Of a stretch of DNA of 64,000 nucleotides, positions 338 to 58,600 are shown in pieces. The notes under the pieces were generated by a model. The model had not been told where the DNA came from. It was given only the letters and a program-made list of their open reading frames with translations, and did no database searches. The stretch lies in NCBI RefSeq assembly GCF_016432865.1, contig NC_067400.1:558124001-558188000 (forward strand), in the 5' to 3' direction. Positions within the stretch are counted from its first letter, which is position 1; every line of letters starts with the position of its first letter. The translations under genes were made by a program, and so were the position numbers. The stretch is from Antechinus flavipes (taxonomy: Eukaryota).

Positions 338-1923
338 GTATGTCAGAGCTGGAGGCGTCTTCGGAGGTGGAGGCCCAAGCGCACCTGATAGCTGCACACT
401 TTGAGCCTCGCTGTTTTGGAGTCAGTGAAGGGCCCCAGGCCTGGTTAGTAAAGAAGAAAAGTAGGGCCCTATGGGCATCTCTACACAAGGCCCAAAACTC
501 CTGGGAGCCTTCTGGACTGCCTAGTGCCCAAATGCAGGCCCTCCATCAGATGGAGCATCGGCTGAAGCATCGAGTGTCCCAGGCTATCCGGAGACTGAAA
601 GCACTGCAGGCCATGCTGACCTTGAGCTCTCCTAGCCAGTCTTTTGGGGGGAGCTCCTTCAAAGGGCTGCAAACCCTGGAAGGCTTCTTGGAGGGGGAGG
701 CTACAGCATTAAGTTTACTGATGCTCGAGCTCCATAGTGATCTGAGCTGCCTGGAGAGCCAGCTGGCCGGGGGCCTTCCCTGCTCTTCCCCACGATGTGA
801 AAAGGTGGCCATAGCTCTGCGGGCCGGCCGGCTGCCTCCTCCCTGGCGGCGTCACATGTCTGCTGGGCCCCAGCCTCCCTGGCTCTGGCTGCACCAGTTG
901 TGGCACCGGGGACAGCTGCTAACCAGATACTTAAATCTATGTGCACAGCTGGATCTGGGGAGGTTTGAACAGCAGAATCGCTCATTTCACCTGTCTGCCT
1001 TCCATCATCCCAGAGGGTTATTCCTGGCTATTCGCTGGGAGGCTAGTCACAACTGGATTACTCCCTACAACACTCTAAGTTTAAGGATAAGTACAATTCC
1101 TGGCCGTGGCCATCCACCCCCGTCCTGCCCTGCCTCCTACCCTGGGGCCCACCCTCACTTCCAGCTTAAACCCAGTTTTATTGCCCTCTCCCGTGACTCA
1201 CCCCAAAGACAGGAGCATGGCAGACCCAGATCTGTTCAGCAGAGTCATAGTCTTGACCTCCGGAGTGACTCTGAAGCTGGCCTTAGACCTGATTCCAATC
1301 GAGGCTCTATAAACAGATATTCTATCTATAGCCAACTTGGTGGAGGCACTGGCAGCAGCTCCAGGCCCAACATGGGCCACTTCCTGGGTACCAATTTTGT
1401 CTTTGGTCATAATTTCAACACTGCCATACCTCGACAAGGGATCCAAGGAATCAGTCTTCACTTTCGGGTAGGTATTCTCAAGTTCTGTTCCTCCCTTCTC
1501 CTCTTCAACCCATAAGCCTGATTCTTCCCGTGCCCTTCCCTGATGCCTCCCAGGTCATAATTGTGTCCTTAGGTGGAATGTGGACCCACACCCTCAGCTT
1601 CTGAGGATGGCCTTCTAATAATGGGACTGCTTCTCCATCATGCCGAATGGAATCCTGAGGCCATGGCCCTGCAAGATGGACACTCAGGCAAGCCCAGCCC
1701 TCTGCCCCCTGTTAGCGTCAATCCCCACTTCGTTAACCAAGAGCCTCCCTTGCCTTTCTCTCCTCTGCCTTTCTATCACTGTCCTGTCTACCTGGGAGGA
1801 CTTGTGGGCCACTCAAAGCTCGACAGTGCCCACCTCTTGTTCCACCTGCCACTGCCCACCAAACTCTGTCCTGACATCTGTGTTCAGCGGAGGGTGTATG
1901 TGTGTAGTCCACCCCTGACTTGA
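338..1923 (+). CDS. DNHD1: Dynein heavy chain domain-containing protein 1, last two coding exons (5' partial): join(338..1467,1573..1923)
   Basis: Acceptor ttcctAG|338; ORF runs to SLHFR|GTAGGT (1468); acceptor ccttAG|1573 gives VECGP...HHAEW...CPVY...HLPLPTKL...VQRRVYVCSPPLT*, which matches the DNHD1 C-terminus; synteny with RRP8/ILK fits. Confidence 0.88.
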
Positions 1924-2868: not shown

Positions 2869-5390
2869 TTAGGTCTTCTTCATTTCAAGGGTCTGCTCCA
2901 TCTCTCTCTGATGGACAAGGCGAATATGGCTCGTTGGCACCCATCTGATTCCTTCTCCTTCTGTAGAGATACAAGCAAACCCTGTTCCCCAAGCAATTAA
3001 CCCGTCGGGTCCCTTCCATTCATCATTTTCTGGATTTCTCCACATCACCTGGCAATTATCTAAAGATAGTAGAGCTGCTTGCACTGGGCCCTTCTCTAGT
3101 GGATTATAAAACCTGTCTGCTGGAGCAAGTGCATCTTTGTCAAAAATCAAGAAGTTAATAGTATAAAGACTAAATCTACAAGTTCTCTAGGGTTACCTGT
3201 GGCTTCCCTTCTTTTGTTATTGGAGGAATGTCTTGATGTCTCTGTTTCTCCCCTCTACTATTGCCTGTCCTTGAGGATTAAAGGGTATGCCAGTGGTGTG
3301 TAAATCTTATACTGTGCACAAAAGTGTGCAAAATGTTTAGAAGTATATGCAGGTCCATTGTCTGTTTTTTTTTGCTTGTGGCACACCCATAATGGCAAAT
3401 GCTTGTGTGAGGAATTCAGTGACTACTCGGGCTATCTCTTTTGCTGCTGGTATTGCAAAAGTGAATCCTGAAAAGGTGTCTACCACAACATGGATAAAAG
3501 ACAGACGACCAAAAGATTTATAATGGGTCACATCCATTTGCCAAATTTCATTGGGTCTCAAACCATGAGAGTTCTTCCCTGAAGGGAGTATAGGAGCATA
3601 GAAAGGAATGCAAGCTGTACAGGCTTTTACTATGCTCCTAGCTTCCTCTCTTGTTATTCCAAATTGTAAACATAAAGCTCGAGCAGCCTGATGATATTCA
3701 GAATGAGATGCCTGGGCTTCTTGAAATAAAGGATTATTGGCCAACATGGTTAGAAGGCTATCTGCCTTTGAATTACCATAAAAAATAGGACCTGGAAGTT
3801 CACTATGAGAGTGGACATGCAAGATGTAAATCTTAGCTGGATGCATTCTCACTTGTTCTTGAAGTTCCTTAAAGAACTGATATATATTACAGGCTACAAA
3901 TTTCATTTGGGTTCTTTGTACCACACCTACTGAATAGGCTGAATCAGATATTAGCATCTCCTTGATAATAAGTAAGAGCTAGCATGATTGCATACAATTC
4001 ATTCTGCTGAGTGGATGGAAAATGAGTTCTGGCTACTCTTATGGTTAAATCATGAGAGTATACAGCACAAGTGTTATATTTGGATGCATCTGTAAAGATA
4101 GCTTGTCCTTTAAGAGGAACCTTAGAAATCTTTTCTTCAAAAATCCATTGCAATTATGCAATAGTCGAGTTATCTTTAAAGGAGATCTGTGTGTAAAATT
4201 TGGAGTCGTGGCCAATAAAATTTGCCACTCTGGGATGTTTTCACAGCATGCATTAATTTGTGCATTGGTATAAAAGGTGTATATCTTGTCAGGTCTTATC
4301 CCAGATAATTGTACTACTCACTTAATGGCCTTTAATAAAATCGTAGCCACAAGCACTGGGTAAGGAGTAAGACTTTGTTCTGGTCGTACTGGGAGGGTCA
4401 CCAACTCTAGCACATTGTCAACTAGATAAAGAACTGTTGTGGGTGCCTCTCTTGTAGCTGATATTTCTAAGCGTTTTGGAGTAACTCAACCACATTGCAT
4501 AAAGCCAGTTCAACTTCTTTAAAAGCCTCTTGAGCTGCTTTTATAAGCTGACATGGTGAGTTTAAACCGGTGTCTCCCCTTAAGATGTTGTAATTGGTTG
4601 TAATTGATGGTAGTTAAGCCTAACACTGGACGCATCTATTGGATATCTCCTATCGATTTCTGAAAGTCATTTAAGGTGTTCAACTTCTCTGTTCTTAAAG
4701 AAAGTTTTTGTACTATAAGCACCTTAAGATATATTTCATATCCTAAATATTGAAAAGGAGCGTGTCTTTGAATTTTTTCTGGAGCTATATGCAATTTGTA
4801 GTTCCTTAGTGTTTCTATGGTCTTTTGTAGACATTTGCTCTTCAGGCACATCCCAATATACTGTCCTTGTAATGTAATAACCAAACTTTTGGTAATGCTT
4901 TTACTGGAGTAAGAGCAGCAGCAACATACATTTGACACATAGTAGGGCTGTTTTTCATTCCCTGTGGCAAAACTGTCCATATCTTTTATAAGGCTCAGCT
5001 AAATTAATGCTGGGTAGTGAAAAGGCAAATCTTTTCATAACCTCCTTATCTAGAAGGATAGAATAGAAACAATCCTTAATGTCTATAACCCAAAGAGGTC
5101 ATTCTCTAGTTTCCATCTGTTCATTTACTTTTCTTAAAACAGTCAACATCCTTCATTTTCCAGATTTCTTTCTTACAACAAAATACAGGGGAATTCCAAG
5201 GACTTAGAGAAGGTTGTAAGTGTCCTTGGTCAAGTTGCTCTTGTATTATATCTAATAAGACCTGAATTTTTTCACTTTGTAAGGGCCACTGTTCTACCCA
5301 CACTGATGTATCAGTTTTCCATTGAATAGGAACAGGTGAGAATGGAAGCAGGCCTTCAATAGCAGCCCTGCCTAAAGAGCTGAAATACTC
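2869..5390 (-). pseudogene. pol: ERV pol (RT, RNase H, integrase), disrupted by frameshifts and stops
   Basis: PVWVEQWPL-like start; [12 protein letters not shown] (~4944-4976); YMDD decayed to YKDS (4860-4871); RNase H AIFTDAS, QQNELYAIMLAL, SDSAYS; integrase HHCC (HSEYH..CTAC), WQMDVTHY, TDNGPAY, WKGPD. Confidence 0.9.
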
Positions 5391-6020
5391 ATTTGTAATC
5401 CTAACTGCTGTAAAATGTCTCTTCCCCACAGACTAATGGGGATTTTATTTACTACAAAAGGAGTTAAAAAACTCCTGTTTCACCTTCAAATATCTCAAAG
5501 GGGTAGTGCTAACTTCAGCTGCTATTGATCCTCCTAAGCCAGACATATAAGTGTCTGCTTTAATCTTTGGCCAGTGATTGCATCAGCTAGCACTTCTAAT
5601 GAACTGTACGATCTGCACCTGTATCTACCAATCCTTCTAATGGTATGCCATTTATATAGATAGTGAGCATAGGATGGTCAGCTGTAACTTCTGCAGTACA
5701 GAATATTCCTGGATTCTGTTGCTTGGAATCAAAATCTGGGCAACTATCACCAGATTGCATATTAGGAGTCTTTATCAATAAATCTGATGTTACTACTTCT
5801 CTTGGATGATAAATCACATTGTCTACCTGTATTAGTGACTGGGATATTAGCTACACATTCCCCAGTTTCTCACATCAGTGTATGGATGAACACTGTTTTC
5901 TAAGTACTCCCAGGAAGTGAAATGGTCAAGCCTGCTGTGCCTGGAGGCAAGGGATCCATAGGCCGAACAGGGACAGATTTCACTTCTTCGAGGGTATCTC
6001 AGTAGTCCCAGCTGCATACA
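5370..6020 (-). pseudogene. pro: ERV pro: dUTPase-like N-terminal remnant plus aspartic protease
   Basis: GLVDTGAD active-site motif (ORF 5596-5817) and ISLWGRDILQQLG motif; upstream LYAAG..IP..EVKSVP..PLPPGT(A)GL resembles a retroviral dUTPase. Confidence 0.75.
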
Positions 6021-31500: not shown

Positions 31501-34500
31501 AGTTTAACAAGAAGTATTTATGAGACACCTTCTATGTACAGGGCCCTGTGGTGATCAACAGAGATAAAACACAAAAATGAAATGACTGCTTTTCATCAAG
31601 AGGTTATATCCTAGAGGAGATGGAGTTACACCTTACAAGTTAAGTAAGTATATACAAAGCAAACACAAAGTTATCTTTTAACAGAAAGCACTAACAACTG
31701 AAAGCAGGGGAGTTTGGATCAAAAAATACTTTAGGTTTGAGCTGAATCTCTAAAAAGATGAAGGTGAGAAGGAAAAACATCCCAGGTGCTGGGACAGGCA
31801 GCCTGTACAAAATCTTACAATGGGAAATGGAATGCTAGGCATAAGTAACAGGAAGTAGGTTAGTTCAGGCAGAATGTACCATGTATGAGGGCAAATAATA
31901 TGAAAAAGATACTCTTGGAATCAATGAAACATTTAAAAAATTGAATAAACTGAATATATAACATGTTTAAAAAAACTATATTGTTTTCAATTTCATATTT
32001 TTCCTCATTGTCTTTTTACATGGTTACTTGTTAAGTTCTTAATTAAAAAAGAAAAAAGAAAGGCTGGAGTCCATCCATCAAAGTATGGTTCTGAAACATG
32101 AAGGCTTGATTTCTTCTCTGATTCAGGCAGAGAGAGCTAGAAGGCTCACTGGAGATCTTATAATCATAGGATCATGTATTTAGTGCTGAAAGAGACCTGA
32201 GGTCGTTTGATTTAGTCCTCTGATTTTAAAGATGGGGAAAGAGAGACCCGAACAGGCTCAGTGACTTTGTAATAAGGGATAGAGATAGGATTTGAAACAA
32301 AATCCTATGACTTCAAGGCCAATCAATACCCTTAATCCAACTTCCTTATTTTAGAGAACAGGATACAGAGATCCGCTGAGAGGATACTAGCAGACAGGTG
32401 TTACACAAGCAGGGGATTCCAAAACTGAGATTCAATGCAGGGGCTTTAGCCTAAAACCACTCATTCTCATCCACCAGGTTGCTTTCCCTTTTAAGTTAAG
32501 TTTAAGTTAAGAAAATGAGGGCAAAAATGCTTACAACAGGCTGTGAAAGAAGAGCACTTCAGACGTTTAATTATGATCATTATATTCTATGTTTCGTACA
32601 TATCCCAGGTTTTTGTGCTCACAACCTTAGCCTGAAATGCCTGTTGCCACAGCCATCCCCCTATCAACTAGTTACTGGTTGGGATCCTGGTCATCTTTCC
32701 AAGGCAAATTCAAGTTTGCATCTTCTTCGGAAAGTCTTTCCTCATCTTTCCAAAATTGTCACTCCTCACTCCAAATCTTCTAGCACTAATCTGTGACCTT
32801 CCCTGAGTCTTAATGCAATCTTGCGAATCTTGGAATTGCCTTTTCTCAGTCTCCCTTAATCTCAAATCACCCCTAGCCATGTCCACTACTCTTTCTGAAG
32901 AGCATTCATTAATCTTCTCTGATTTGTCTGGTCACTTATTCACCAGAGACCCTCCAAGATCCATGTTGTGCTTCCTAATCATGAGTCCCCTCCTCCAAAT
33001 CTCTGACATTTTCTCCTCAGGTGATATAACAAGACCCATGGCCAGAACTGTCATCTTTTGGTCTTTCAGCAAAATGTCAATTTTGGGCAGAAGTTATCAT
33101 CTTTCAACCCCACCTAGCTACATAGAAAGTGATCCTTTCTAGCTACGACCTTGGGGCACCTCCAGCAACATTTAATTCCTAAGTTAGAAATGGACATTTG
33201 TGCAACAAGTATCTCTGATAAAGGCCTCATTTCTCAAATATATAGAGAATTGAGTTAAATTTATAAAGATGCAACTCATTCCCCAACTGATAGTAAAAAG
33301 GATATGAACAGTCAAGTTTCAGATAAAGAAATCAAAGCTATCTCTAGTTATATGGAAAAATGCTGTAAATCAAAGCTTCTCAAACTATAGGTCTCAAAAT
33401 TATGGTTTATTATCAATAAATGTTTGATATGTATACCTATTTTATATATTTTTATATGTCCCAGATAAGTAATATAAATTTCTTGGGTGAAAAGGATCAT
33501 AAGTAGAAAAAAAAAAAAAAAAAGGAAAATGTTGGATGTTGCAGGGGATATGGGAAAATGGGACACTAATACAATCATTCTGAAAGAGCAATTTGGTACT
33601 ATGTCTAAAGGGACAGAAAATTATACACACCCTTGTTCCATCAATACCCCTACTAAGTCTATATTTCAGACATCTAAAAAAAAAAGGGGGGGGGAAGGAA
33701 CTATTTGAGCAAAAATATTTACTGCAGCTCTTTTGTGGTGGCTAAGAACTGAAAAAAAGGCTTAGTAAGCTGGGGAGTATGATTGTAATGGACTTTATTG
33801 TACTACAAGAAATGATAAGCAGGATAATTTCAGAAAAAGAACCTGGGAACACATGAACTGATGCATATTGAAATGAACAGAACCAGAATATCTTACACAG
33901 TAACAGTAACTGTGAATGTAGTAATTCTCTACAATACAATGATCCAAAAGAATCCCAAAGGATGAAGCATACTATTTTCATTTTCTTTCACTTAAAAAAA
34001 AAATCTTCTTGTACAAAATGCCTAATATGGAAATGTTTTACATAATTGCCCATGTGTAACCTACACCTATATCTGATTGATTATGGTCTCAGGTAAAGAG
34101 CACGGGAGGAAGGGTAAAAATTTGGAACTCAGAACTTTAAATAAAAATGTTAAAATAAAAAAAAAAAAAAGGGGGGGGGGGGGGAGAGATGGACAACAGA
34201 GACCAAACCCGGGCGTGAAAAGGAGGTATCCCTCGTCCCTCCACCCCTAGGTCCGGCCCCACTACCTAAGACAGGACCCGGTGGGGGGAAGCCGCAGGAA
34301 ATCGCCGCTCCCTCCCTAGAGGGGTCCCTAGAACTCAGGGCGAGGGGCACACGGACACTGGGACCCCGTGGATCCTGGCGCCCACCGCAAGGGCGGGAGC
34401 CATTGGGCCACACGGCCACGGAGCTCCTTAAGAAGAGGGCAGACTGACAGCCCCCGGCGGGGTTCCCACGGGCACCGGCGGAGCGGTAATATTAGGACAC

Positions 34501-34822
34501 ACGAGGTTCAAGAGGACCGAATGTGGGGGGGTCACACAAACACAGGGGGCGAGCCCCACACGCCGCTGATTCCAAGAATCGGGGGGGAGGGGGAGTGTCA
34601 TGCACACGCAGAGGGAGGGACACGCGGACACGAGGGGCTTAGGACTCACCAACACCCGGCTCACGAGAACCCTAGGGCACAAAAGAGAGGGGAAAGTACA
34701 CGCCCACGCGGCGGCAAACTTACCTTGGCGCGCGGCGCCGGCTTAACCCTAGCGCGCGGGATCGGGGGAGTGCGGGCGGCCGGGGCCGGGGGCTCCTCCG
34801 CCCACTCAGGCTCCTCGAACAT
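17816..34822 (-). CDS. RRP8: Ribosomal RNA-processing protein 8 / nucleomethylin (SAM-dependent m1A rRNA methyltransferase), 7 exons: complement(join(17816..17929,18240..18336,23572..23678,24160..24289,24409..24910,31125..31347,34724..34822)), ~423 aa
   Basis: MFEEPEW start; [12 protein letters not shown]; [10 protein letters not shown]; FCLSLMGTN; [12 protein letters not shown]; PCLYKRR*. All GT/AG boundaries are phase-compatible. The exon-2 donor (AAAG|gttggg at 31125) is weak and is the least certain boundary. Confidence 0.92.
18446..18479. repeat. (TG)n microsatellite
   Basis: Perfect TG run. Confidence 0.95.
20112..20256 (+). mobile_element. Very short L1 3'-end insertion nested in an older L1 3' UTR, 15-bp TSD
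   Basis: AAAAAATGAATGTTA at 20097-20111 and 20257-20271; G-rich L1 tail, AATAAA and A-run inside. Confidence 0.65.
21901..23313 (+). mobile_element. Young 5'-truncated LINE-1 (ORF2 C-terminus, 3' UTR, poly-A) with 15-bp TSD
   Basis: TSD AAGAAAGGCAGAGGA at 21886-21900 and 23314-23328; ORF2 peptides ([31 protein letters not shown]); TT|AAGA endonuclease-type target. Confidence 0.93.
26820..28110 (+). mobile_element. Old L1 3' remnant, split by an unrelated insert at ~26940-27480
   Basis: TCAAAGGATATGAACAG..., CTTTGACTCAGCAATACC, AATTATGGTATATGAATG and AGTGAGATGAGCACAACTAGG L1 3' motifs. Confidence 0.55.
28110..28237 (-). mobile_element. WSINE1-like tRNA/CORE SINE
   Basis: GGGGTTAAGTCACTTGCCCAGGG...TCTGAGGCCGGATTTGAACTCAGG...GCTGCCCC. 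Confidence 0.75.
28481..28513. repeat. (AC)n microsatellite
   Basis: Perfect AC run. Confidence 0.95.
29515..29699 (-). pseudogene. Degenerate intragenic duplicate of the RRP8 intron1/exon2 junction (pseudo-exon)
   Basis: Colinear similarity to 31305-31454, including the exact 17-mer TGTAATGTAGTTTGGAG; acceptor cag|GGC kept at 29595; in-frame TGA at 29515-29517. Confidence 0.75.
29981..30456 (+). mobile_element. Young L1 3'-end insertion, same subfamily as 21901-23313, 16-bp TSD
   Basis: TSD AAATTATACCTGACAA at 29965-29980 and 30457-30472; near-identical to 22782-23250. Confidence 0.92.
33200..34155 (+). mobile_element. Older L1 3' fragment
   Basis: TCTGATAAAGGCCTCATTTCTCAAATATATAGAGAA, AAGGATATGAACAG and 3'-UTR tail motifs. 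Confidence 0.7.
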
Positions 34823-34862
34823 GGGGGATCCGGGACCACGTGCGACACGGCTATAAACCAGG

Positions 34863-35000
34863 ACCAACGAGAGGAGGCTATGGGCGCCCAGAGCGACCGC
34901 TCCGCTCGCCGGGCACCAACGAGAGGAGGCTGTGGGCGCCCAGAGCGGTTGCTCCGCCCGATAGAGACCAGCGAGAGGAGGCTGTGGACGCCCAGAGCGG
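34863..35000. repeat. 52-bp tandem repeat, ~2.6 copies
   Basis: ACCA(A/G)CGAGAGGAGGCT(A/G)TGG(G/A)CGCCCAGAGCG starts at 34863, 34915 and 34967. Confidence 0.9.
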
Positions 35001-35597
35001 CGGCGTGGCGAGGGGCGGGGCCAGGCCGGGATCCGAGGCGGGTGTGGCAGGGCTGGCGGAGGAGGCAGCGGCCGGAGTAGGAGGCAGCTACGGTTGGACC
35101 TGGCCCCTGGAGCCCCGGTAAGGAATCGTGCGAACTTGAGGCGGGGGCGGGGCCACGAACCCATTTTATGGTTTAGGAAACCGAGCCCGGAAAGTGGCAC
35201 TGAATTGCCCGCGCTCGGCGGGCCTGGATAACGGGCGGGCGGAGTCCCCAGCCTAGTCCCAGAACGCTGTGCAATTCGGGCCGGTCGCTACTTTCTGTGG
35301 GCTACAGACCCCTCAACTGTCAGGTGGGGCTCGGGGCAGTCTGTGGCGGTGCCTCCCTTCACCCTTTTCTGGAACGAGGGAGTCTCTGGAGAGGGGAAGG
35401 GACAACGCCCAGGAGCGACTCCTGCCCTTTCACTGCGGGAGGGCCTCCTCCCGACTCTTCTGTGGCAGACTAGTGGCTCTCCCCCCGCGGGCCCGAACAT
35501 TCCCACGCGCACAGCCGCTTCCGAGGTCACGGTGGGTGCGTTGCTGCTGCAGGGAGAAGTCAGCGCCCGGGGCCCACTCAGCCTCGGCGGGGCTCTG

Positions 35598-35652
35598 CCG
35601 GGGAAGTCCGAGGCTGCTCCTCCGGGGAAGTCCGAGGCTGCTCCTCCGGGAA
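35598..35652. repeat. 24-bp tandem repeat, ~2.3 copies
   Basis: CCGGGGAAGTCCGAGGCTGCTCCT twice plus a partial third copy. Confidence 0.9.
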
Positions 35653-36031
35653 GGATAAGCTTGTTTGGAGACGAGTGCATTGACTAAGCGGGGTGCGGGG
35701 TGGGAGGGACGTGGAAAAGCCTTCTCCCTGTAGCTCACGCCTGTAAGCCGGGCTGTTCTCTGGGAGCGTGTCGGCTGTTGTCTGTCTCAGAGGAGCGAGG
35801 AGCGCCTGGAGAGGTCCACCGGTATGACTATCCCCAGCCGGGTCATCCTCCTCTGCTACTTTCCCCGTCCTGCTGCTGGCGCAGCATCTTGGACAAGCCA
35901 GGCAGCGAAGATGGCTCTGACCCACTGGGACCGAAAACAGGGGGGAAAGGCTTTTCTTTTGGGGGGGTGATAACCGGAGTGCCTCTCCCCCCTCTCCTCC
36001 TGACTCCCTAGGGCCCGAAGCAGCTGCTGTC

Positions 36032-47956: not shown

Positions 47957-50900
47957 TCAAGGGTCTAGCAGGGCTTTCAAGAGGGCTGGATAGTTGGGAG
48001 TTCCCCAACCTGTGACTGGATCCCAACCGGGTTTGGAACAGAATCCCTGACCCTGCACCTCTTCATCCAGGCAAGCCTCATGGCAGCCTTGAGTCACCTG
48101 TGGTAAAAAGGGAAAGGGTTATACCTGAAGGCCTGCCCCCCCCAAATACCTCAAATCCTCCATATTCTCACTACAAACTTTGTCCTCACCCATTTAACAC
48201 CTTCATTTCCACCCTTGTTCTCCCCAACCCCTATCTCCACCCCCCAAACTCACATCAAATAGGCCACGACCCTGCATTGAGTATAGTCGAGGGTTGAGGA
48301 AACCCAGAGGGGGACGGCCATTCAGGAGTCGCTGCTCATTCACTAAGGACAAGAGCCCCCCAAAGACAGGGGTTGATGCCTGTGGAAGGAGGAAAGAATG
48401 CATATGACAAAGAGCAAAAGGAACAGGAAAAAGCAGCATGTCTTTCTACTTAACTGGCTAGAGTGGGGATAGTGTGTGATCCAAGGAAGAAAAGAGTGTG
48501 ATAGAAGTAGCAGTCATGATAGAAAAAGCCACGTAAGCACAAGGATGAAAATTGGGCTAGGGAAGTGACAGTGGTCTCACCGAAGTGCCAGATACCCAGG
48601 GAATGGGCACATGGTTGCTAACCACCCAGTAGCCATCAGAGAGTGCAGCTACATCAGGATAGGCCCGGCCACTTGCATTGTAGTAACTGGAGGGAGGCAG
48701 GTGAGTGGAAGAGCCCAAAAAGTGGGACACAGCTTCATCCTAAAGAGGGAGAACAGCCATGGGGACTCAGAGCCCATCCTGATTATTCCTCTAATGCCCA
48801 CAGGCCATTTATGTCTCTCAGACTAGGAATATCAAGAAGGGTCTTGTAGGACTGAATTCCCCTGGTGCTGGGGGGCAGGGTAAGTTATCACTCTCACACC
48901 TGGTACTGAGGCCTTGGGAAGATGTTACTGAAGCCGCCGCCACTGATGTAGTCGACAATCTCTTCTGTAACCATGAAGGGATTCCGGAAGGAAGTCCCAC
49001 CCACTGTTGTAACATAGGGGCTGTAGACATAGAGGTCTGGGAATTAGTACCTGGGGATTTAGGTCAGCAGAAAGGCTCAGGGCCCCAAGGATCGTAGGTT
49101 ACCCAGTCCCACAGATCCTGCGTCACAGGTTAGAAGGTTTCCCAAAGGTCACAGGTCAGGGGAGCCTCAAAAGTCACCATTAAGAGAAGAGAGCATCTCA
49201 GTTTGGTGTTACAGCTTGGGAACAAAGTAGCTGAGTGGTGGTGAGGAGGGTTACCTGGAGGCTGGGAAGCTGGGACGGAACAAGTGGCCCTTTGGTCCTG
49301 AGAAACACCCGGCACCGCTGTCCCCTGATAGAAAAAACAGCGACAGGTCTGAGGTTAGTTTTTGAAGTCAGGAGTTTAGAGAAGGGAGAAAAAATGAGGG
49401 ATTCTTTAAAGAGGCCTTAAGATGGGAAATGCAGGAAAATGGGCTGAGGCAGGAATATCAGTAAGAGATCAAGGTTAGGAATCAATCAATTGGACTTGAA
49501 GATGGAGTCTTCTATCAGGATCAGAAGTCTTGAGCATGAGTACCGGAAGCAAAGAGCAGGGTGAGCCCTCGAGCAGCGGCCTTCATGAGCTCAGAGTTGA
49601 CCCGGTGAAGGTAGGCAGTACTGAGCGAATCCTCATCATCCCCATAGCTCACAGTGTGCACCAATGGCAACGAAGACTCGTTACTGAGCAGGAGGAGCCA
49701 CTGCAGGAAAGGCTCCTGGGCCTCATGACGGCCTAAAGGTCAGAGAGAGAGGGCACTGTTTTCTCTACTCAAGTGGGGGGAGCCAGATGTGCCAGGGTCC
49801 CCTTTTTTTAACCTCTAGGGGCTGACCAGCCTCATAGTTATTTTTCATTCACCTCAGAAGGGGCTTTCTGGAAGCATCTCTTAGGCTCTGTTTCTCTACC
49901 CATGGTGGGGAGGGAGCCAGATGCACCTGGATCCCCTTTCTCCCCTCCTTTAACCCCACTCTGGGGGATAACACTAGTTACCTTTCATCCTCCTCAGAAG
50001 GGGCTTTCTGGAGGCATCTCTTAGGCTCTGTTTCTCTACTCATGGGGAGGAGGGAGCCAGATGCACCTGGATCCCCTTTCTCCCCTCCCTTAACCCCACT
50101 CTGGGGGATAACACTAGTTACCTTTCATCCTCAGAAGGGGCTTTCTGGAGGCATCTCTTAGGCTCTGTTTCTCTACTCATGGGGGGGAGGGAGCCAGATG
50201 CACCTGGATCCCCTTTCTCCCCTCCCTTAACCCCACTCTGGGGGATAACACTAGTTACCTTTCATCCTCAGAAGGGGCTTTCTGGAGGCATCTCTTAGGC
50301 TCTGTTTCTCTACTCATGGGGGGGAGGGAGCCAGATGCACCTAGATCCCCTTTCTCCCCTCCCTTAACCCCACTCTGGGGGATAACACTAGTTACCTTTC
50401 ATCCTCAGAAGGGGCTTTCTGGAGGCATCTCTTAGGCTCTGTTTCTCTACTCATGGGGGGGAGGGAGCCAGATGCACCTGGATCCCCTTTCTCCCCTCCC
50501 TTAACCCCACTCTGGGGGATAACACTAGTTACCTTTCATCCTCAGAAGGGGCTTTCTGGAGGCATCTCTTAGGCTCTGTTTCTCTACTCATGGGGGGGGA
50601 GGGAGCCAGATGCACCTGGATCCCCTTTCTCCCCTCCCTTAACCCCACTCTGGGGGATAACACTAGTTACCTTTCATCCTCAGAAGGGGCTTTCTGGAGG
50701 CATCCCTTAGGCTCTGTTTCTCTACCCAAGGTGGGGAGGGAGCCAGATGCACCTGGATCCCCTTTCTCCCCTCCTTTAACCCCACTCTGGGGGATAACAC
50801 TAGTTACCTTTCATCCTCAGAAGGGGCTTTCTGGAGGCATCTCTTAGGCTCTGTTTCTCTACTCATGGGGGGGAGGGAGCCAGATGCACCTGGATCCCCT

Positions 50901-53871
50901 TTTTCCCCTCCCTTAACCCCACTCTGGGGGAATAACACTAGTTACCTTTCATCCTCCACAAAAGGGGATTTCTGGGGCATCTCTTAGGCTCTGGTTTTGA
51001 GGGTTCTTGGAATGCCAATTTTTTGAATCTCTATGGGGAGGTGGCCTACCAGGGCTGCTGTAAACCCAGGTGGAGATGTTGGCTCCAGCGCTCATGAGGT
51101 ACTGTACATCTAGACTGGCTTCCAGTCCAGCTCGGCCATGTCCTTGTTGCCCAACTACTCGACTGACGGAGTTTTTGTGAGGGAAGCTCTTCCCAAAGAG
51201 TTTCATGAACTCTTCTAGATCAGCATCATGGAAGTACTGCTCTAGGAACTAGAGGGGGAGGAGAAATAGAATAGAAAAGGTCAGGGTCAGAAAAGGATGG
51301 GGAAATGTATTGACTTTCTCAAAAGAGTGTCACATATAGGAGGGAGCTCACCTGGGCACAAGCCTGGCTATTGTTGGGAGACCCAGCGCCCACATCCTGT
51401 GCAGTCAGGTTGTATCTCTCACGAATCACAGCTGGAGTCACCCCCATGTGCAGACTTAAGGACTCCTCTAGCTCCAGCTTTGGCCCTGGTCGTTGCTGTA
51501 AGGAGGAGGCTCTAGGGAACCGGTGGAGTCCACCCACTATGCATTAGGAGGAAATGGAATTAGCTTCTAGGCAGGATCCTATTTCCCTCCCTTCCCAATT
51601 TCCAGTCCCCAAACCAATTACCAAAGTCCACATGGGCAGCCAGGGCCCCAGGGAGGCTGTATGGACGTGGGGACCTCACAACACGGCCTCCCCCCAGTCT
51701 CCCAACAAAGCGATGGAACTCTGCCCCAGGAAGGAGCTGCTCTGCTTGCCTGGGGGTCAGAAGTCACAGAGCTGGGAGTCAGCAATTATTAGAAGAATCA
51801 GGGGGGTGGGGAGAACCTTTACAACCCCTTATCCCTCCTTGGGCAGCTAGTCCCCAACTCACTGGACAGTCATCTGGCAGGTCAGGAAGTCCTCTGTGAT
51901 CACTGTTTGGCAATCTTGGACTCCAACCGCTAGAAGCCATTTCTGCACAGTGCTAAGAGTGAGTGTTGATGGTCGGACCAATGCAGCTACATCTTCCAGA
52001 GACAGGTACTTCCCTATTGGGAAGAGGGGAAGAGTGGATTGAAGGAATTATCAGTAAATCTCATGGGCACAGATGTTATAGTTCACCCCAAGCTTTTGAG
52101 AGAGAACACTGAGGGTTGAAAGGGTCCAGATCCCTGGGGGATGGTAGCTTAGTTTATTACAGATCTTGAGCTAAAGATTTTTTTAGCATTTCCATTCATT
52201 AAACTTAGTCATCACAATTCTTTTCTAGACCTCTTACAAACATTTGACACCAAATCCAGTGCTTTTTCTATATCACAGTCCACTCCAACAAGATTTAGGT
52301 GGTTGTCCTTCATTTTTGAAGACACCCAAAATACTATGTTAGAGTTAAATTATGTGTCTATCCTCTGTAGCTGATCAGACCAATACAAGCTCAGAATGCT
52401 CTGCCTCAGGTCTGAGGCAATCCCTTAGGAACATTTGAAGTGGATTTTCTTACTCTCCACAACTTGTGTTTCTAATTGTGTTTTTGTGTCTTTGCTCATG
52501 TGTGCTTTTTCTGGAATTTGTATCTCTTCTTCTCCATATCCTCTAATTGCTGTCAAAATTTTTCCCACTCTTTACAGTATATCTCCACACCTCTTCCAGT
52601 TTTCCCTAGTTTCACTCAGAGTTTAGAAATGGGGGATCAGACCCCATTGTGCAGAAGATAGGGCTGGATTTATAAGCTTGAGAATTTATATAGGTAGAAT
52701 ACCTTTAAAAGTTTGGTCAGAGAATTCGAGATACAGAGAAAGGGATGGTTCAAGAGAGACAGGAAAAGAACCAAGAGACAAGTGTCACCAAAACCAATGG
52801 AGTAGAGTATCCAGGAGAAAGGTTTGGTTACCAGCTTTAAAAATTCCATTAGTCAAGAAATAAAACACAAGCCCGTTTGGTTTAGAATGTTATGTTGGGG
52901 TGGGGTGGGAGCAGAGCGAGAGAGCTGCTTAGAACCCCTGGAATTGGAGAAAAAAGGGATTATTATACAGCTTATACGACCTATGCAGTTCATTTTCTTT
53001 CACTCTATATTCAACCCCGAACACAGATCTTCCCTCCAATTGGTATTGCTATTCGCAGTCTATCTAGTGTCCCTCCATCCCCACCCCTACATACTTCCCC
53101 CCAACACACACACACACCGTATCGGGGGGAGCCAGGGTCGGATACATCGTGCACCAGCTTCTGAAGTTGCTGCAGGTTCTGCTGTCTCAGAGCGAAAGTC
53201 AGACTCAATGATTCAGTAGGACCCACACGGCCAATAGACACCCAGCCCGGCGGCGGCCTGGGAACATGGGGAAGGGGAGTGCGTGTGAAATTAGGGTTCC
53301 TTCTTTTTTTACAGGCTCGTATCAGATCTGGGGTGATGGGAAAAAGGGGAAAGGGGGTCTAAGAATGTTGAGGTTTAGGGACTTCCAAAAGGTCTGGTGT
53401 CAAGGATTCATACCAAGTGCTGCTGGGGAATGGCGGAGGAGCTGGGGGAAAAGAAGATTGGGAATCAAGATCAAAGAATGGCTGATGGGGGAATTTTAGA
53501 GGTAAATGGTAATAGTTTGGGAAGGGGAGAGGGGAGAGGCGGGTCGGACCCTCGCGGAAATAACAGTAGTTCTTAATATACTTTCCTCAAATCAACCACG
53601 TGAAAGAAGCGAGTAGTCTAAGAGTTGGTCTGGGGGGAGCAGGGAGGCTGGCCGAGGTCAGGGGCGGGCACTCACAGGAAAGGCTGGTCAGGCTCTGGGC
53701 CAAGGCCTCGGGCACAGACACACAAGGCGACGAGCAGCAGGAGCAGGGGCCCGGGGACGCTGCGGAACAGGGGGGAGGAAAGAGTGAGCGGGGCCGGGGA
53801 CATCGGAGAGCGAGCCCATCCCGAGCTCCCGCCCGGCCCTGGCCCGGAGCTCACCAAACCTCCGGCCCCAT
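47957..53871 (-). CDS. TPP1: Tripeptidyl-peptidase 1 (CLN2, sedolisin family S53), 13 exons: complement(join(47957..48097,48254..48379,48581..48739,48900..49020,49255..49324,49544..49732,51050..51248,51352..51536,51622..51749,51863..52013,53118..53257,53676..53759,53855..53871)), 569 aa
   Basis: Signal peptide; prosegment; catalytic GLEASLD (Glu/Asp), ASGDSG (oxyanion Asp) and GTSAS (Ser); [12 protein letters not shown]; 17-nt first coding exon; all phases consistent. Confidence 0.96.
49757..50993. repeat. Minisatellite in TPP1 intron 7, unit ~137 bp (137-140), ~9 copies
   Basis: Marker GCATC(T/C)C at 49874, 50014, 50151, 50288, 50425, 50562, 50700, 50837 and 50977; inner copies near-identical, outer copies diverged. 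Confidence 0.97.
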
Positions 53872-54110
53872 GGCAGGACCCTGGGAACAGAAGGAAGCCG
53901 GGACAGCGTGGGCACTTTCCCGTATAGATGTGGGCGGGTTGGGGGACGGACAAGGAGAGCCCCGCCCCTCCCTCAGACACGCGCAAACCCCGTGTTGGGC
54001 GGGTCCCCACAAACAAAATCAGACGGAAACCCCCACCCTCCACCCCGCTCCGCCCCGCACGTACCGCAGCTCCGCACCCACGTAAGCACACCAATAGGCA
54101 CAACACCCCC
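53560..54110. promoter_or_regulatory. CpG island / TPP1 promoter; E-box CACGTG at 53597-53602 (possible CLEAR-like site)
   Basis: CpG-rich across exons 1-2; GC boxes; the CCACGTGA motif is only a partial CLEAR match. Confidence 0.65.
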
Positions 54111-54146
54111 AAACAAAGGGAAGCAGCTCCAGGTACAAACAGTCTC

Positions 54147-54152
54147 TTTATT
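54147..54152 (-). terminator. Poly(A) signal of DCHS1
   Basis: The first minus-strand AATAAA I found after the DCHS1 stop, followed by GAGACTGTTTGT (GU-rich). Confidence 0.65.
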
Positions 54153-55624
54153 AAGGCTCCGGAGTGAGAATATTTGGCACTTTGGGTCTGGGTACGAGGG
54201 CAGCCTGAGCTCTCCCTCACCCAATAAATAAGGATCCGGGGCCTTGGGAGGGGGGATTCTGGGAGCAGCTGAGCCCCCAGGGCAGAACCCCTGCCCTGAG
54301 CTCTCCAGGGCAGAGATCGTTAGGTCTTACCCTTGCAGAGTTCCCCCTCTCTGAGCCCCCAGGACAGAACTCCTTCGCTAAGCCCCGTTCAGGTCGGAAT
54401 CCACCCCCAAACCTGGACTATCCCTTGGGCAGAGTTCCTACTCTAGATTACCCTTCCAAGGACGGTGTCCCCTCTATGACTACCTCTTCCCCCGCCCCTC
54501 CCCCTATTCTGTTCTCCCCAGTTCTGAGCTGAGGTCCCACTGACATCCTCCTTAGACCTCCGGAGACCCAGCCTGGCCTGCTCTTTACTCTTCTGGGCTC
54601 AAAGAAACAAGCTTCCTGCTTGAGGGGGGAGGAGGGGGAAATGGAGACACAGTGCGGGTGCTGTTAGGATCCGGGGTCAAGAAAAGGGGGGCCTCAGAGG
54701 CAGACGCTGCTAAGTCTATTGCCCAGTTCAGTTCTGGGGAGTGAAGTTTTGTAAGACGGGAAAACCAGCAAGGCACTGGTTATGGGAGGTGGCAGGACCA
54801 GGCAGAGGAAGGAAAAGAAAAGGGAGTTTGGGGAGAGGGGAGCACAAGTGTTGCTCCTGAGCCAATTCTGAGGCCCGAGGATGGTCACTGAAACAGGTCC
54901 GGCTGGGGAAGTATTGCTGAGGGGCCAGAATTTTCTGCATTCTGGTACAGGAGAGGCTCCAAGCAGAGGCTGGATGACGAGTCTGGCCATTTGGGAAGAA
55001 GGTTCGAGATCTAAGACTGGTAGTGCTCCTAACCAGGGGTATCTGGTGTTAGATCACAGATGTGGGGAATGTGTGTTTGTGTGCATGTTGGGCTTCAGGT
55101 TGAAGGTGGGAGAGCTAAGAAAAAGAGAGGGCAAGAAGGTATACATACTGGTGTAAACTTTGGGCTCTGGGGGAGATATATGATAAGCCAGGTCTGGGGA
55201 ACAAAGATTGGACTCTGGGGACCTGGGATATGCATATACTGATTCCTGGGGTCCAGGGGATGTAAGCTGGGCCTTCGTATATGTTGGGCCTCAAGAGTTG
55301 GATACGCCAGGGCCAGTAGGCAGGGTATATATATGCTGGGCCCTGGGCCCCAAGGGATATATATTCCGAGCCCTGGGGGAATCTAGGCTGGGCCTGTGAG
55401 GGCCCCTCTGTCAGGGGTGGTGACTGAGTTTGTGCTCTAGGAGGGGTATCTCTGGGGAGCCAGATAGTGTCCCCACCAGGGGGAAGCAGTGGACCCTGGA
55501 GTAATTTCTTGCCCCAACCTAGGGATGGGAGGAGATGGAACTGGGGAGAGGCCTCTAGGGGATAGGCCAGTGGGCTCATCCTGTGTCCTCACGATTACGC
55601 AGGGGCCCCTGGGAGCTTTCCAGT

Positions 55625-58600
55625 CTAGATATGTAGCTCTGCCTCATCAGGGGCCTCCAGGCCAGGCTCTGCACTCAGAGCTGAGGCAGAGGGTCCTTGT
55701 GCTACCCCAAAGGGGGAAACAACAGGGGAGCGGGCAGCCAGCGGTGATAGTGAAGGTGAAAAACTGGGGGACATGGCAGCTGAGGACAGGGATCCTTCAT
55801 GGCTAATGGGGGAGCGGTGGGTGGGCAGGAAGGGGCCGCGGACTCCCGGGCCTGAAGAGTTAGCTGGCTTAGGGGGTACAGACTTGGCCCCAGGGTGGGC
55901 CACAGCGGTAATGAGGGGTGGTGGGTCAATTCGGGGTGCAGGTGGGCAGGGCCGTGCCTCGTCCTTGAGCCGAGCAATCTCAGTGAAGACACTGGCCAGT
56001 GGCTGGAACTGGGGACACCAGCTCAGCAGGTAGTCCCAGTTGTAGCTGCCCCGGAGCTCCTCTTCTCCCGCCACAATGGCTGTGAGTGCCCCTGCCACGC
56101 AGGGCTTGCCGTCAGCTGGGAAACCATAGTCTCCAGGAGGGGCAGGGCTCAGGCCACAGCCTCCTAGGAAGGCCCCAGCAGTGCTGGCAGCTGGTGGGCC
56201 CTCCTCTCGGTAAAGCCCGGGCCCAGGGCCTGGAAGCAGCAGCCCAGCCTTTCGGCCCTTGTACCAGGCATCAGGTGGAGGTGGCTCACAGGATGTATCG
56301 CTCAGTCCGTCAGCATCAGCGTCTTGTTGGATGCCAGAGTCAGGGCCACGGGCAGCCAATGAAGAAGCAACGCTGGCCACTCGGGGGAACTCATTGATCA
56401 TCCGTATCTCGTCATCTTCAGCTGCCTCAGCAGAACCACGCCCACTGGAGTGGGAAGGGTCCAGGGAGCCACCGCGTGGGTAAGGACCGCCTGTGCTAGG
56501 CCCACCATACCCAGGCAACGTCTGGTGGTAAAGGTGTTCGGAATGTGGGGGACTAGGGGCCTCTCGGCCTGGTTTTTGCAGGGAGCTGGTGCTAAGAGGG
56601 GCAGGTGGAAGAGTGGACCCCGGGGCTGCCTCCGCCTTGTGAGCTCGAGCACGTACTAGCCCCAACACCAGGGCTGCTAGTGCCAGGACCACCACCACAC
56701 CCAGGGAGGCGGCAACAGCACCCACTAACAGCAGGTTGAGGTCAGGGGCTAAGCCTAGCGCCGTGTGGGTGATATCCACAGTCACAGGCACTGCAGCACT
56801 TCGGGCTCCAGGCAGGGGCCCTCGAGCCACCACCTCCAGCTGTAACTCCCGGGGTGCCTCCCGCCTCGCCCGGCCTACTCCCCCGGCTTCGCTGGCCCCT
56901 GCACCTGGTGCCTGGCTGTCCACTCGTAGGTACAGAGCACCTGTGGTCTGGTTGATCCCAAAATACGGGGAGGGAGCAGAAAGGGAGTACAGGACCACAC
57001 CATCCGCGCCTCCATCCTCATCTGAGGCCAGCACATGGCCCAGATTGTAGCCCCGACGGGCACCCTCAGGCACTTGAAAGTGGAATGAAGGTGCTAGGAA
57101 GACAGGATCATACTCATCTTCACCAGTTACTAGCACAGACAAGGTGACTGAGGCTGAGAGGTTCCCTGCATCTGCTGCGCCCACAAGCAACTGGAAGCTG
57201 CGGGTGTGCTCATAGTCAAAAGGGACTCTTGCCCGAAGTTCACCTGATGAGCCATTCAATGCAAACATGTCCCAGTGGGTGGCTCCCAGTCCTGGCCCTA
57301 ATCCTGGTTCTAGTAGCGTGTAGTGGAGCCGCCCAAAGGCCCCAGTGTCCTTATCCAGGGCATGGAGGGTGGTGACCAGTGTTCCCGGAGGCTGGTTCTC
57401 AGGCAAGCTGGCACTCAGAGTAAGCAGGGGAAAGGCAGGCCCGTGCTCGTTGACGTCCTGTACTTCCACCGTAACAGGCACCAGGGCAAAGTGGGCTCCA
57501 GGAGGGTCAGCTGCTTCAACCACCAGTTGATGCTGTGCTTGAGCTTCTCGGTCCAGCTGTCGTGCTAAGCGGAGGGCCCCTGAACTTTCATCCAGCTCAA
57601 AGTGGTGTGCGGGGTCCCCAGAACTGATGGTGAAGTAAATCAGACCGTGGGGGCCCGGATCAGCGTCAGAGGCTGCCACACGCAACAACTCAGTGCCCAC
57701 AGGAGTGTCCTCCGGCACAGCCACACGGTAATGGGGCTGGGCGAAGACGGGCGGGTTGTCGTTGACGTCCTGCACGGTGATGACGACCAGGACACTTGTG
57801 CTTCGTGGAGGCTTCCCTCTATCCGCTGCACACACCGTCAAATTGTACTCAGTGACGCTCTCAAAGTCCAGCGGCTCAAGCAGCACCAGACAGCCCAAGG
57901 CCTGGGGACCGGAGCCACCTTTGGACAAGTGCCTCTCCAGCTGGAAGGCCTGTCCGCGGTTGCCACTGATGATGGCATAGTCCAGTGTAGCGTGCGGTCG
58001 GCTCTGGTCAGCATCTGTAGCTTCCAGGATTAAAACTGTGGATCCTGGGGGCAGGTCCTCAGCAACAGTGATGTGGTAGTAGGGCTGCACAAAGCTGGGA
58101 GTGTAGTCGTTCTCATCCTGCAGCTGAATGTGGACTGTGGCCTGTGCTGTCCGTCCCGGGACCCCATGGTCGCGTGCTTCCAGCACCATATCCACTGTGC
58201 CCAAACCGCCCAGGCTCTGGGAGGCCGCTTGAATCATGAACAGGGTCCCTAAAGAGGGGGGATATGGGTATTAGTGGGAAGGAGAGTGCAGGTGGGGCCA
58301 GTAGTCAGGACAGGGCTGGAGGGAAGGAGGAGGATGAGGAAGAAACAGATTGGAGAATTTAGGGTGAGGGGGTGAAGGTTGGAGGTCAGCATGAGAGGAG
58401 AAATCAACTTTGTATGCACTACTGCACTCAGTAGTTGTGTGTTAAATATTTGATGAATGAATGAATAAAAAATGGAGCAGGGGAAACTGGAGAAGAGAGA
58501 GGAATCTGGAGGAAAGGCAGAGGGCAGGAAGGAACTAAGGAATGAGGTGGGGAGGGAAGTGCACCGTTGCTGGGGTCGATGTCAAAACCCTCTGCGCTGG

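What the first reader, a model, noticed from the sequence alone, without database searches (positions are those of the whole stretch)
49982..50858. TPP1 intron-7 minisatellite is an array of frame-preserving candidate mini-exons
Seen: on the TPP1 sense (minus) strand each inner unit reads polypyrimidine (CTCCCTCCCCCCC)-ATGAG-TAG | 51 nt | AAG/GTAACT. An example exon is 50122-50172. Seven copies keep both sites (one is 54 nt), separated by ~86-nt spacers. Intron 7 is phase 1, and the cassette translates stop-free as [17 protein letters not shown]. The donor resembles this gene's real exon-9 donor (CAG/GTAACC) and is preceded by purine-rich GAGGATGAAAG. Inference: repeat expansion multiplied a latent cassette, so TPP1 could yield isoforms with 0-7 in-frame 17-aa inserts in the catalytic domain after ...YSSP, or the array could act as a splice-site decoy that tunes enzyme dose. 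Copy number is probably polymorphic. TPP1 is the CLN2 gene, and human intron-7 acceptor variants are known to be pathogenic.
Basis: partly seen in the sequence, partly recalled or inferred. Interest (0 to 1): 0.75.

Follow-up and report, generated by a model that had tools for sequence, protein, structure and literature searches.

The report
Repeated pseudo-exon minisatellite in TPP1 intron
In the yellow-footed antechinus, a 137-base piece of intron 7 of the lysosomal enzyme gene TPP1 has been copied about eight times, multiplying an exon look-alike that relatives carry once and that the Tasmanian devil leaves out of its main TPP1 message, so this looks like ordinary repeat growth and not a new way of making protein variants.

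Summary
Window 49848-50993 is a 137-bp x 8.3 tandem array (96% match) that fills 87% of TPP1 intron 7, which is phase 1 on the minus strand. Seven units carry pyrimidine tract-TAG | 51 nt (one 54 nt) | GTAACT, and the insert is open in frame.

The window is Antechinus flavipes: it is 100% identical to the NCBI locus.

Comparison with relatives explains the array. Opossum and tammar have no middle unit (introns of 286 and 245 nt). Devil and dunnart have one (361 and 347 nt). Only the antechinus has eight (1317 nt).

- The devil's single copy keeps both sites and 54 in-frame bases, yet devil RNA contigs join exon 7 directly to exon 8.
- The dunnart copy is 44 nt, which breaks the frame.
- The look-alike exon diverges at the intron rate (5.6%, against 6.2% for introns and 2.0% for exons).
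- The annotated antechinus protein is 569 aa with the normal junction, as in ten marsupial species.
- Human in-frame insertion at this junction (c.887-10A>G) causes disease.

Best reading: a young, neutral, G-quadruplex-prone intronic minisatellite that multiplied an old pseudo-exon. No antechinus RNA reads could be tested, so low-level inclusion is not excluded.

This scan has already reported several splice-site minisatellites elsewhere in this genome.

The parts
51050..51248 (-). TPP1 exon 7 (199 nt). It ends ...YSSP plus the first base of the Gly codon.
   Evidence: human TPP1 230-295, E=2e-31. joints at 51248|51352 and 49731|51049. P0185 reads the same residues.
49733..51049 (-). TPP1 intron 7: 1317 nt, GT..AG, phase 1.
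   Evidence: (joint that skips 1317).
50946..51049 (-). 'Lead': the old, degenerate first copy of the exon-like segment. It has no acceptor-like site and ends at the first GTAACT.
   Evidence: It is shared with devil, dunnart, tammar and opossum.
49848..50993 (-). 137-bp minisatellite, 8.3 copies, 96% identity.
   Evidence: Units are cut and aligned.
49843..50945 (-). Eight middle units: u1 50945-50808, u2 50807-50671, u3 50670-50533, u4 50532-50396, u5 50395-50259, u6 50258-50122, u7 50121-49982, u8 49981-49843. Central units are identical or differ by one base. The end units are degenerate.
50808..50858 (-). Pseudo-exon 1 (51 nt). Copies of 51 nt lie at 50671-50721, 50533-50583, 50396-50446, 50259-50309 and 50122-50172.
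49982..50035 (-). Pseudo-exon 7 (54 nt). This is the ancestral length, as in the devil and, apart from a 10-nt deletion, the dunnart.
49843..49895 (-). Eighth exon-like segment without a donor (GT changed to AA at 49842-49841).
   Evidence: donor score -20.8; devil and dunnart still have GTAACT here.
50073..50920 (-). Six G-quadruplex motifs (four G-runs of three or more, loops of 1-7) on the sense strand, one per unit in six of the eight units: 50920-50896, 50646-50622, 50508-50484, 50371-50347, 50234-50210, 50097-50073.
49733..49842 (-). 'Trail': the old last copy. It runs into the authentic pyrimidine tract and acceptor of exon 8.
49544..49732 (-). TPP1 exon 8 (189 nt).

Best explanation
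This is a young, lineage-specific intronic minisatellite.

History (shown). The ancestral marsupial intron 7 (about 250-290 nt) held one copy of a segment ending in GAAAG|GTAAC. The dasyurid ancestor duplicated about 140 nt. This created a middle unit that happens to look like an exon: a C-rich tract, TAG, 54 nt, then GTAACT. In the Antechinus lineage a variant with a 3-nt deletion (51 nt) was amplified to about eight units.

How it grew (inferred). Amplification probably went by replication slippage or unequal exchange, helped by the G-quadruplex-forming G-rich strand.

What happens in RNA. The whole array is removed with intron 7, and exon 7 is joined to exon 8. This is shown for the devil and agrees with the antechinus annotation, but it is inferred for antechinus RNA.

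Why the look-alike exons stay silent (inferred):
- Their acceptor has a C-rich, U-poor tract and no consensus branch site.
- It competes with a much stronger authentic exon 8 acceptor.
- It is predicted to pair with the upstream G-rich tract.
- The 51-nt size is near the lower limit for exon definition.
For: Structure and identity:
- Array and units.
- The window is A. flavipes, 100% identical to L002.
- Intron 7 lengths: 1317 (antechinus), 361 (devil), 347 (dunnart), 245 (tammar), 286 (opossum) nt. The middle unit is present once in devil and dunnart and absent in tammar and opossum.

No sign of use or constraint:
- The devil's single module keeps both sites and 54 in-frame bases. Yet RNA contigs carrying devil alleles join exon 7 to exon 8 directly.
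- No RNA contig lies on the module, although one run keeps a depth-7 contig of intron 9, about 1% of the main contigs.
- The dunnart module is 44 nt, so the frame is broken, and its upstream donor-like site is GT>AT. The antechinus trail donor is lost.
- Devil-antechinus divergence is 3/54 (5.6%) in the module, 6/86 (7.0%) in the spacer, 6.2% in other TPP1 introns and 2.0% in real exons.
- Within the array, the exon-like and spacer parts do not differ in variation (Fisher p=0.23), and two acceptor tracts are disrupted.
- XP_051843582.1 (569 aa) has the normal junction and is the longest product on record for the gene. TPP1 is 569 aa in all ten marsupial species of its 90% cluster; the two longer entries differ only at the N-terminus and one 442-aa devil entry was not aligned.

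Site quality:
- The pseudo-acceptor scores 7.2 bits, against a median of 10.4 for the seven verified TPP1 acceptors and 11.3 for exon 8.
- There is no YTNAY within 60 nt upstream, whereas five of the seven real acceptors have one at -24 to -44.
- The tract and the donor are paired in predicted folds.

Origin:
- G4 motifs occur in six of the eight units.
- The unit has no dispersed copies, no tRNA and no Rfam family.
Against: - By a rough matrix the donor (7.96 bits) is slightly above the median of the gene's own verified donors (7.3). The acceptor lies within their range.
- G-runs just downstream of a donor, and the purine-rich GAGGATGAAAG before it, are contexts that can enhance splice-site use (general knowledge).
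- All RNA evidence is from the devil, with one copy, and from assembled contigs, which drop rare forms.
- No A. flavipes RNA reads were available, so low-level inclusion or an effect on splicing efficiency in the antechinus is not excluded.
- The fold z-score for a single unit is not significant (-1.4).
Confidence: 0.8

Rival explanations
1. Leaky cryptic splicing. In the antechinus the eight-fold multiplied module is occasionally recognised. A small share of TPP1 mRNAs then carry one or more 51-nt in-frame inserts. These escape nonsense-mediated decay but encode impaired enzyme: splicing noise, not a function.
For: - Both sites lie within the range of the gene's verified sites.
- A GTAAC-type donor is used constitutively at exon 9.
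- Inserts would be in frame and stop-free.
- Eight copies raise the number of chances.
- Contigs cannot exclude rare forms.
Against: - No junction was seen in devil RNA contigs.
- No annotated or collected protein in the 90% cluster has a +17n length.
- The acceptor lacks a consensus branch site, is C-rich, and is predicted to be paired.
- Human data suggest such products would be harmful, so selection would favour silence.
Confidence: 0.12
2. Decoy array that tunes dose. The pseudo-exons bind U1 and U2AF without being spliced in. This slows removal of intron 7 or promotes its retention, so copy number sets TPP1 output.
For: - Decoy exons that promote intron retention are documented (PMC6097662).
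- Tandem repeats that shift splicing are common in humans (PMC10078293).
- The intron is now over 1 kb with many site pairs.
Against: - Described decoy exons are highly conserved. This module is not: it diverges at the neutral rate, its frame and sites are broken in relatives, and the array is absent outside Antechinus.
- No intron 7 RNA contig was seen in the devil.
- There is no evidence for a dose change, and nothing was tested in the antechinus.
Confidence: 0.05
3. Assembly artefact. The array, or its copy number, is a mis-assembly of a single unit.
For: - Short-read contigs break inside the array.
- Observed depth is about 0.77 of what the assembled copy number predicts.
Against: - Units carry distinct variants in an ordered pattern: a 54-nt unit, two units with changed tracts, single-base differences, and a 412-bp higher-order period.
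- Unitigs inside the array have 4.1-4.6 times the flank depth in a run of the same species.
- A relative about 2% diverged also enters the array from both flanks and holds a u7/u8-type piece.
- The best-holding run may be the source sample, so this is not fully independent.
Confidence: 0.02

Closest known systems
Intronic pseudo-exons (site pairs that look like exons but are not spliced in)
   Same: - Acceptor-like and donor-like sites of mid-range strength flank about 50 nt inside an intron.
- It is absent from the dominant mRNA in the devil, and from annotated proteins.
- Such pairs are frequent: 81 as good or better in the rest of this window on both strands.
   Different: Here one pseudo-exon has been multiplied seven to eight times by tandem duplication, and by chance it preserves the frame.
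Human F7 intron 7 37-bp minisatellite with repeated pseudo-donors (PMC1557585)
   Same: A minisatellite in an intron multiplies splice-site consensus copies that normally stay silent, and the most upstream authentic donor wins.
   Different: - The F7 array starts at the exon border and copies the authentic donor only.
- This array starts inside the intron and does not copy the authentic donor (CTG|GTAGGC versus AAG|GTAACT).
- It carries acceptor-like sites as well.
Decoy exons that promote intron retention (SF3B1 intron 4; PMC6097662)
   Same: Cryptic cassettes with both splice sites inside an intron of more than 1 kb.
   Different: - The described decoys are highly conserved and have junction reads and U2AF binding.
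- This module is young, not conserved, and has no junction evidence.
Splicing-associated tandem repeats (spl-TRs; PMC10078293)
   Same: An intronic tandem repeat close to splice sites whose length could in principle change splicing.
   Different: - Those repeats are mostly short motifs that act through RNA-binding proteins or branch-site spacing, and they were found through association with RNA data.
- No such association was tested here.
G-quadruplex-forming GC-rich minisatellites such as human CEB1 and CEB25 (general knowledge, not checked in papers here)
   Same: A G-rich strand with four G-runs per unit, and fast lineage-specific change in copy number.
   Different: - The unit is longer (137 bp) and only part of it is G-rich.
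- Instability was not measured.
Tandem exon duplication that produces alternative cassette exons
   Same: Tandem copies of an exon-plus-intron module inside a gene.
   Different: - The duplicated module is not derived from a real exon.
- It shows no coding constraint and is not in any annotated transcript.

Membership tests
Intronic minisatellite (VNTR) | Head-to-tail units of tens of bases with high identity | tested here: met
   137 bp x 8.3, 96%. Central units are identical.
Intronic minisatellite (VNTR) | Lies wholly inside an intron | tested here: met
   Array 49848-50993 lies inside intron 49733-51049.
Intronic minisatellite (VNTR) | Copy number varies between close lineages | tested here: met
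   One middle unit in devil and dunnart, eight in antechinus, none in tammar and opossum.
Intronic minisatellite (VNTR) | Copy number polymorphic within the species | tested here: inconclusive
   Array unitig depth is 4.1-4.6 times the flank, against 5.3-6 expected from the assembly. This could be a shorter allele or coverage bias.
Pseudo-exon | Consensus-like acceptor and donor flank an exon-sized stretch in an intron | tested here: met
   Acceptor 7.2 bits and donor 7.96 bits, within the range of verified TPP1 sites.
Pseudo-exon | Not included in mature mRNA | tested here: met
   - Devil RNA contigs join exon 7 to exon 8 directly.
- The A. flavipes annotated protein has the normal junction.
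- Antechinus RNA reads themselves were not available.
Functional alternative cassette exon | Junctions or cDNA that contain it | tested here: not met
   - None in devil RNA contigs.
- No +17n product in the 90% protein cluster.
- Rare forms, and antechinus RNA, were not testable.
Functional alternative cassette exon | Splice sites and reading frame conserved above the intron background | tested here: not met
   - The dunnart module is 44 nt.
- Donor-like sites are lost in the dunnart lead and the antechinus trail.
- Divergence is 5.6%, against 6.2% for introns and 2.0% for exons.
F7-type splice-donor minisatellite | The first unit spans the exon-intron border and copies the authentic donor | tested here: not met
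   - By TRF the array begins 56 nt into the intron.
- The first donor-like GT lies 105 nt into the intron.
- The authentic donor CTG|GTAGGC differs from the unit's AAG|GTAACT.
Decoy exon (intron-retention type) | Cryptic exon highly conserved across species | tested here: not met
Decoy exon (intron-retention type) | Host intron retained in a share of transcripts; U2AF bound at the decoy | not testable with these tools
   - Only assembled devil contigs were available.
- They show no intron 7 contig, although an intron 9 contig was kept.
Transposable-element or ncRNA-derived repeat | Dispersed copies, a tRNA-like head, or a match to an RNA family | tested here: not met
   - No significant copy elsewhere in the window.
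- No tRNA.
- The best Rfam hits score 15-24 bits against gathering scores of 70-83.

The most novel reading that the evidence does not exclude
In Antechinus the eight-fold amplified, frame-preserving pseudo-exon is recognised at a measurable level. It would give either a ladder of TPP1 isoforms with 17-residue inserts after Pro301, or copy-number-dependent slowing of intron 7 removal. A polymorphic minisatellite would then set the dose of a lysosomal enzyme whose loss causes CLN2 disease in humans.
Probability: 0.1. Interest if true: 0.55.

Novelty: new member of a known kind. Interest (0 to 1): 0.2.

Why it matters
The case gives a clean, dated series: no module in opossum and tammar, one in devil and dunnart, eight in the antechinus. 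It shows how tandem duplication can multiply a complete exon look-alike inside an essential disease gene while the annotated protein and, in the devil, the main mRNA stay unchanged.

It would make a convenient natural substrate for asking why pseudo-exons with decent splice sites are ignored. One-unit and eight-unit alleles could be compared in minigenes.

It does not, on present evidence, reveal a new isoform mechanism. Human data on in-frame insertion at the same junction argue that use of the units would be harmful.

Tried and rejected
- Pfam on single exon translations gave nothing. A PDB sequence search identified TPP1 instead.
- The first look-up of earlier findings near this place was blank.
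- Transposable-element or ncRNA origin was rejected: no dispersed copies, no tRNA, and no Rfam family near its threshold.
- F7-type donor minisatellite was rejected because the authentic donor is not copied.
- Assembly artefact is unlikely.
- Alignment A1 scattered three short exon pieces and was discarded in favour of A2.
- In one search the dunnart whole-gene baseline (21-25% 'divergence') is an artefact of badly chosen spans and is not used. Only the devil baseline and the direct unit alignments are used.
- MaxEntScan and SpliceAI are not available. The matrix scores come from frequencies I recalled from classical tables, and I use them only to compare sites within this window.
- I did not build or search a joined spliced TPP1 model. 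Exon pieces were used one by one by reference, as separate rows beside a database protein. After that, the database's own full-length proteins were used.
- The human intron 7 length (about 157 nt) was derived from coordinates printed in a paper's table, not from human sequence.

Full report
**What is there**

TRF reports one array at window 49848-50993, with period 137, 8.3 copies and 96% matches. It is the only large minisatellite in the 64-kb window.

The gene on the minus strand is TPP1. The translation of 51051-51248:- aligns over all 66 residues with human TPP1 230-295 (E=2e-31), including the catalytic Glu272 and Asp276 region.

Reading the sequence together with RNA-contig joints gives these parts:
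- exon 7 at 51248..51050
- intron 7 at 51049..49733 (1317 nt, GT..AG, phase 1)
- exon 8 at 49732..49544

The array fills 87% of the intron.

Cutting the array at each GTAACT gives eight units of 137-140 nt. In phase 1 the segment reads E + [16 protein letters not shown] without a stop. The eighth unit has lost its donor.

**Is it more than chance?**

I scored sites with a rough position matrix. Its frequencies are ones I recalled from the classical tables, so I use the scores only for comparison inside this window.

| Site | Pseudo-exon | Seven RNA-verified TPP1 sites |
|---|---|---|
| Donor AAG\|GTAACT | 7.96 bits | 2.6-11.6, median 7.3 |
| Acceptor | 7.2 bits | 4.7-11.3, median 10.4 (exon 8: 11.3) |

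The sites are plausible but not strong. The rest of the window holds 34 (+ strand) and 47 (- strand) acceptor/donor pairs, 30-250 nt apart, that score as well or better. Of these, 13 and 11 have a length divisible by three.

One such pair in an intron is ordinary. Seven copies of it are one event multiplied by duplication.

**Which genome, and what the relatives show**

I did not build a joined spliced protein model. The route to the full-length protein was:
1. A search of the representative library with exon 7 alone gave a full-length shark TPP1.
2. A profile of that protein plus five window exon pieces as separate rows (A2) was searched against the word-indexed protein collection.
3. This found XP_051843582.1, tripeptidyl-peptidase 1 of Antechinus flavipes, 569 aa.

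Its genomic locus L002 is 100% identical to the window's minus strand, so the window is the yellow-footed antechinus.

Loci for four other marsupials were fetched. Intron 7 compares as follows:

| Species | Intron 7 length | Middle units |
|---|---|---|
| Antechinus | 1317 nt | 8 |
| Tasmanian devil | 361 nt | 1 |
| Fat-tailed dunnart | 347 nt | 1 |
| Tammar wallaby | 245 nt | 0 |
| Grey short-tailed opossum | 286 nt | 0 |

Alignment shows a common lead and trail in all species. A single middle unit is shared by the three dasyurids, and only the antechinus amplified it.

- The devil's middle unit (L001 about 5841-5989) keeps the C-rich tract, TAG, 54 in-frame bases and GTAACT. The latent cassette is therefore older than the array.
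- Antechinus unit 7 keeps the 54-nt form. Units 1-6 share a derived 3-nt deletion.
- In the dunnart the segment is 44 nt because of a 10-nt deletion, so the frame is broken. Its upstream donor-like site is AT instead of GT.
- In the antechinus the donor-like site at the start of the trail is lost.

**Constraint**

Devil-antechinus divergence:

| Region | Divergence |
|---|---|
| Real TPP1 exons | 2.0% |
| Other TPP1 introns | 6.2% |
| Exon-like segment | 5.6% (3/54) |
| Spacer | 7.0% (6/86) |

The look-alike exon evolves like intron. Within the array, the exon-like and spacer parts do not differ significantly in variation (p=0.23). Two units have disrupted pyrimidine tracts.

**RNA and annotation**

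The run search found RNA only for 'organism A'. Two of those runs, from different studies, were laid on the window. Their contigs carry exactly the devil alleles at every listed exon 7 and exon 8 difference (one search compared), so this RNA is devil or indistinguishable from it.

In both runs the contigs join 49732 to 51050 directly. No RNA contig lies on 49770-50939. One run nevertheless keeps a depth-7 contig of intron 9, about 1% of the main contigs. The single-copy module is therefore skipped in the dominant devil mRNA. Contigs cannot exclude rare forms.

For the antechinus itself no RNA reads were available. Three indirect points apply:
- The only annotated protein reads ...[15 protein letters not shown]....
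- It carries no 'isoform X' label and is the longest product on record for the gene.
- TPP1 is 569 aa in all ten marsupial species of the 90% cluster. The two longer entries differ only at the N-terminus, and a 442-aa devil entry was not aligned.

**Why the units are probably ignored (inferred)**

- The pseudo-acceptor tract is C-rich and U-poor.
- No YTNAY branch consensus lies within 60 nt upstream, whereas five of seven real acceptors have one at -24 to -44.
- A GAG sits directly before the TAG.
- In predicted folds the tract pairs with the upstream GGGAGGGGAG...GGGG run, and the donor GGUAAC pairs with GUUAUC. The z-score is -1.4 for one unit and -2.65 for 2.3 units.
- At 51 nt the segment is near the lower size limit for exon definition.
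- The authentic exon 8 acceptor is about 4 bits stronger.

Points on the other side: G-runs downstream of a donor, and the purine-rich stretch before it, can enhance splice-site use. A GTAAC-type donor also works at exon 9.

**Why it expanded (inferred)**

Six of the eight units carry a canonical four-run G-quadruplex motif on the sense strand. That feature is known from unstable GC-rich minisatellites. The unit has no dispersed copies, no tRNA-like part and no Rfam match, so it is native intron sequence and not a mobile element.

**Would inserts be tolerated?**

The insert would fall between Pro301 and Gly302, which are human Pro295 and Gly296. In humans:
- c.887-18A>G is listed as likely pathogenic.
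- p.Gly296Asp is also reported.

Being in frame is therefore no evidence of function at this site. It argues that use of the units would be selected against.

**Assembly and copy number**

In a run of the same species, unitigs inside the array have 4.1-4.6 times the flank depth. The assembly predicts 5.3-6. The array is multi-copy in reads, but the exact number, or a shorter second allele, is open.

A relative about 2% diverged enters the array from both flanks and holds a u7/u8-type piece. The expansion may therefore predate that split.

**Verdict**

This is a real and neatly datable example of a known kind: an intronic minisatellite that multiplied a pre-existing pseudo-exon. The proposed function has no support.

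Earlier notes of this scan report several splice-site minisatellites elsewhere in this genome. This one differs in that it copies a whole pseudo-exon and not an authentic site.

Noticed in passing
window 55628-58237 (-): An 870-aa open frame with four cadherin repeats (E=1e-67) lies just upstream of TPP1. In the devil locus the neighbouring gene encodes a 3308-aa cadherin. This fits DCHS1 next to TPP1, as in human 11p15.4 (the synteny is from my own knowledge).
   Followed up: partly
window 340-1512 (+): A 391-aa open frame matches the dynein heavy chain C-terminal domain (E=1e-11). It may be the last exon of a DNHD1-like gene.
   Followed up: no
window 3340-3957 (-): A 206-aa open frame carries a retroviral integrase zinc-binding domain and part of the integrase core. 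It is a fragment of an endogenous retrovirus or LTR element. I only observed it.
   Followed up: no
window 34001-36000 and 54001-58000: Stretches with 57-63% G+C (CpG-island-like) hold two short GC-rich tandem repeats at 34862-35001 (52 bp x 2.7) and 35598-35650 (24 bp x 2.2).
   Followed up: no
L004 (opossum) intron 7, L001 (devil) and window 50945: The donor-like motif GAAAG|GTAAC, about 100-170 nt into intron 7, is old. It is present in opossum, devil and antechinus, and changed to GA in tammar and AT in the dunnart lead. It long predates the array.
   Followed up: partly
window 49733-49800 (-): The authentic exon 8 acceptor has its only consensus branch motif (CTGAC) at -8, which is too close. 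Its AG-free zone is only 21 nt. The real branch point probably lies in the last degenerate repeat unit, so the repeat abuts the functional 3' splice region.
   Followed up: no
L001 about 5915-5932 (devil): The devil's single unit has a longer C-run before the TAG (9 extra bases). This homopolymer tract is itself length-unstable between species.
   Followed up: no
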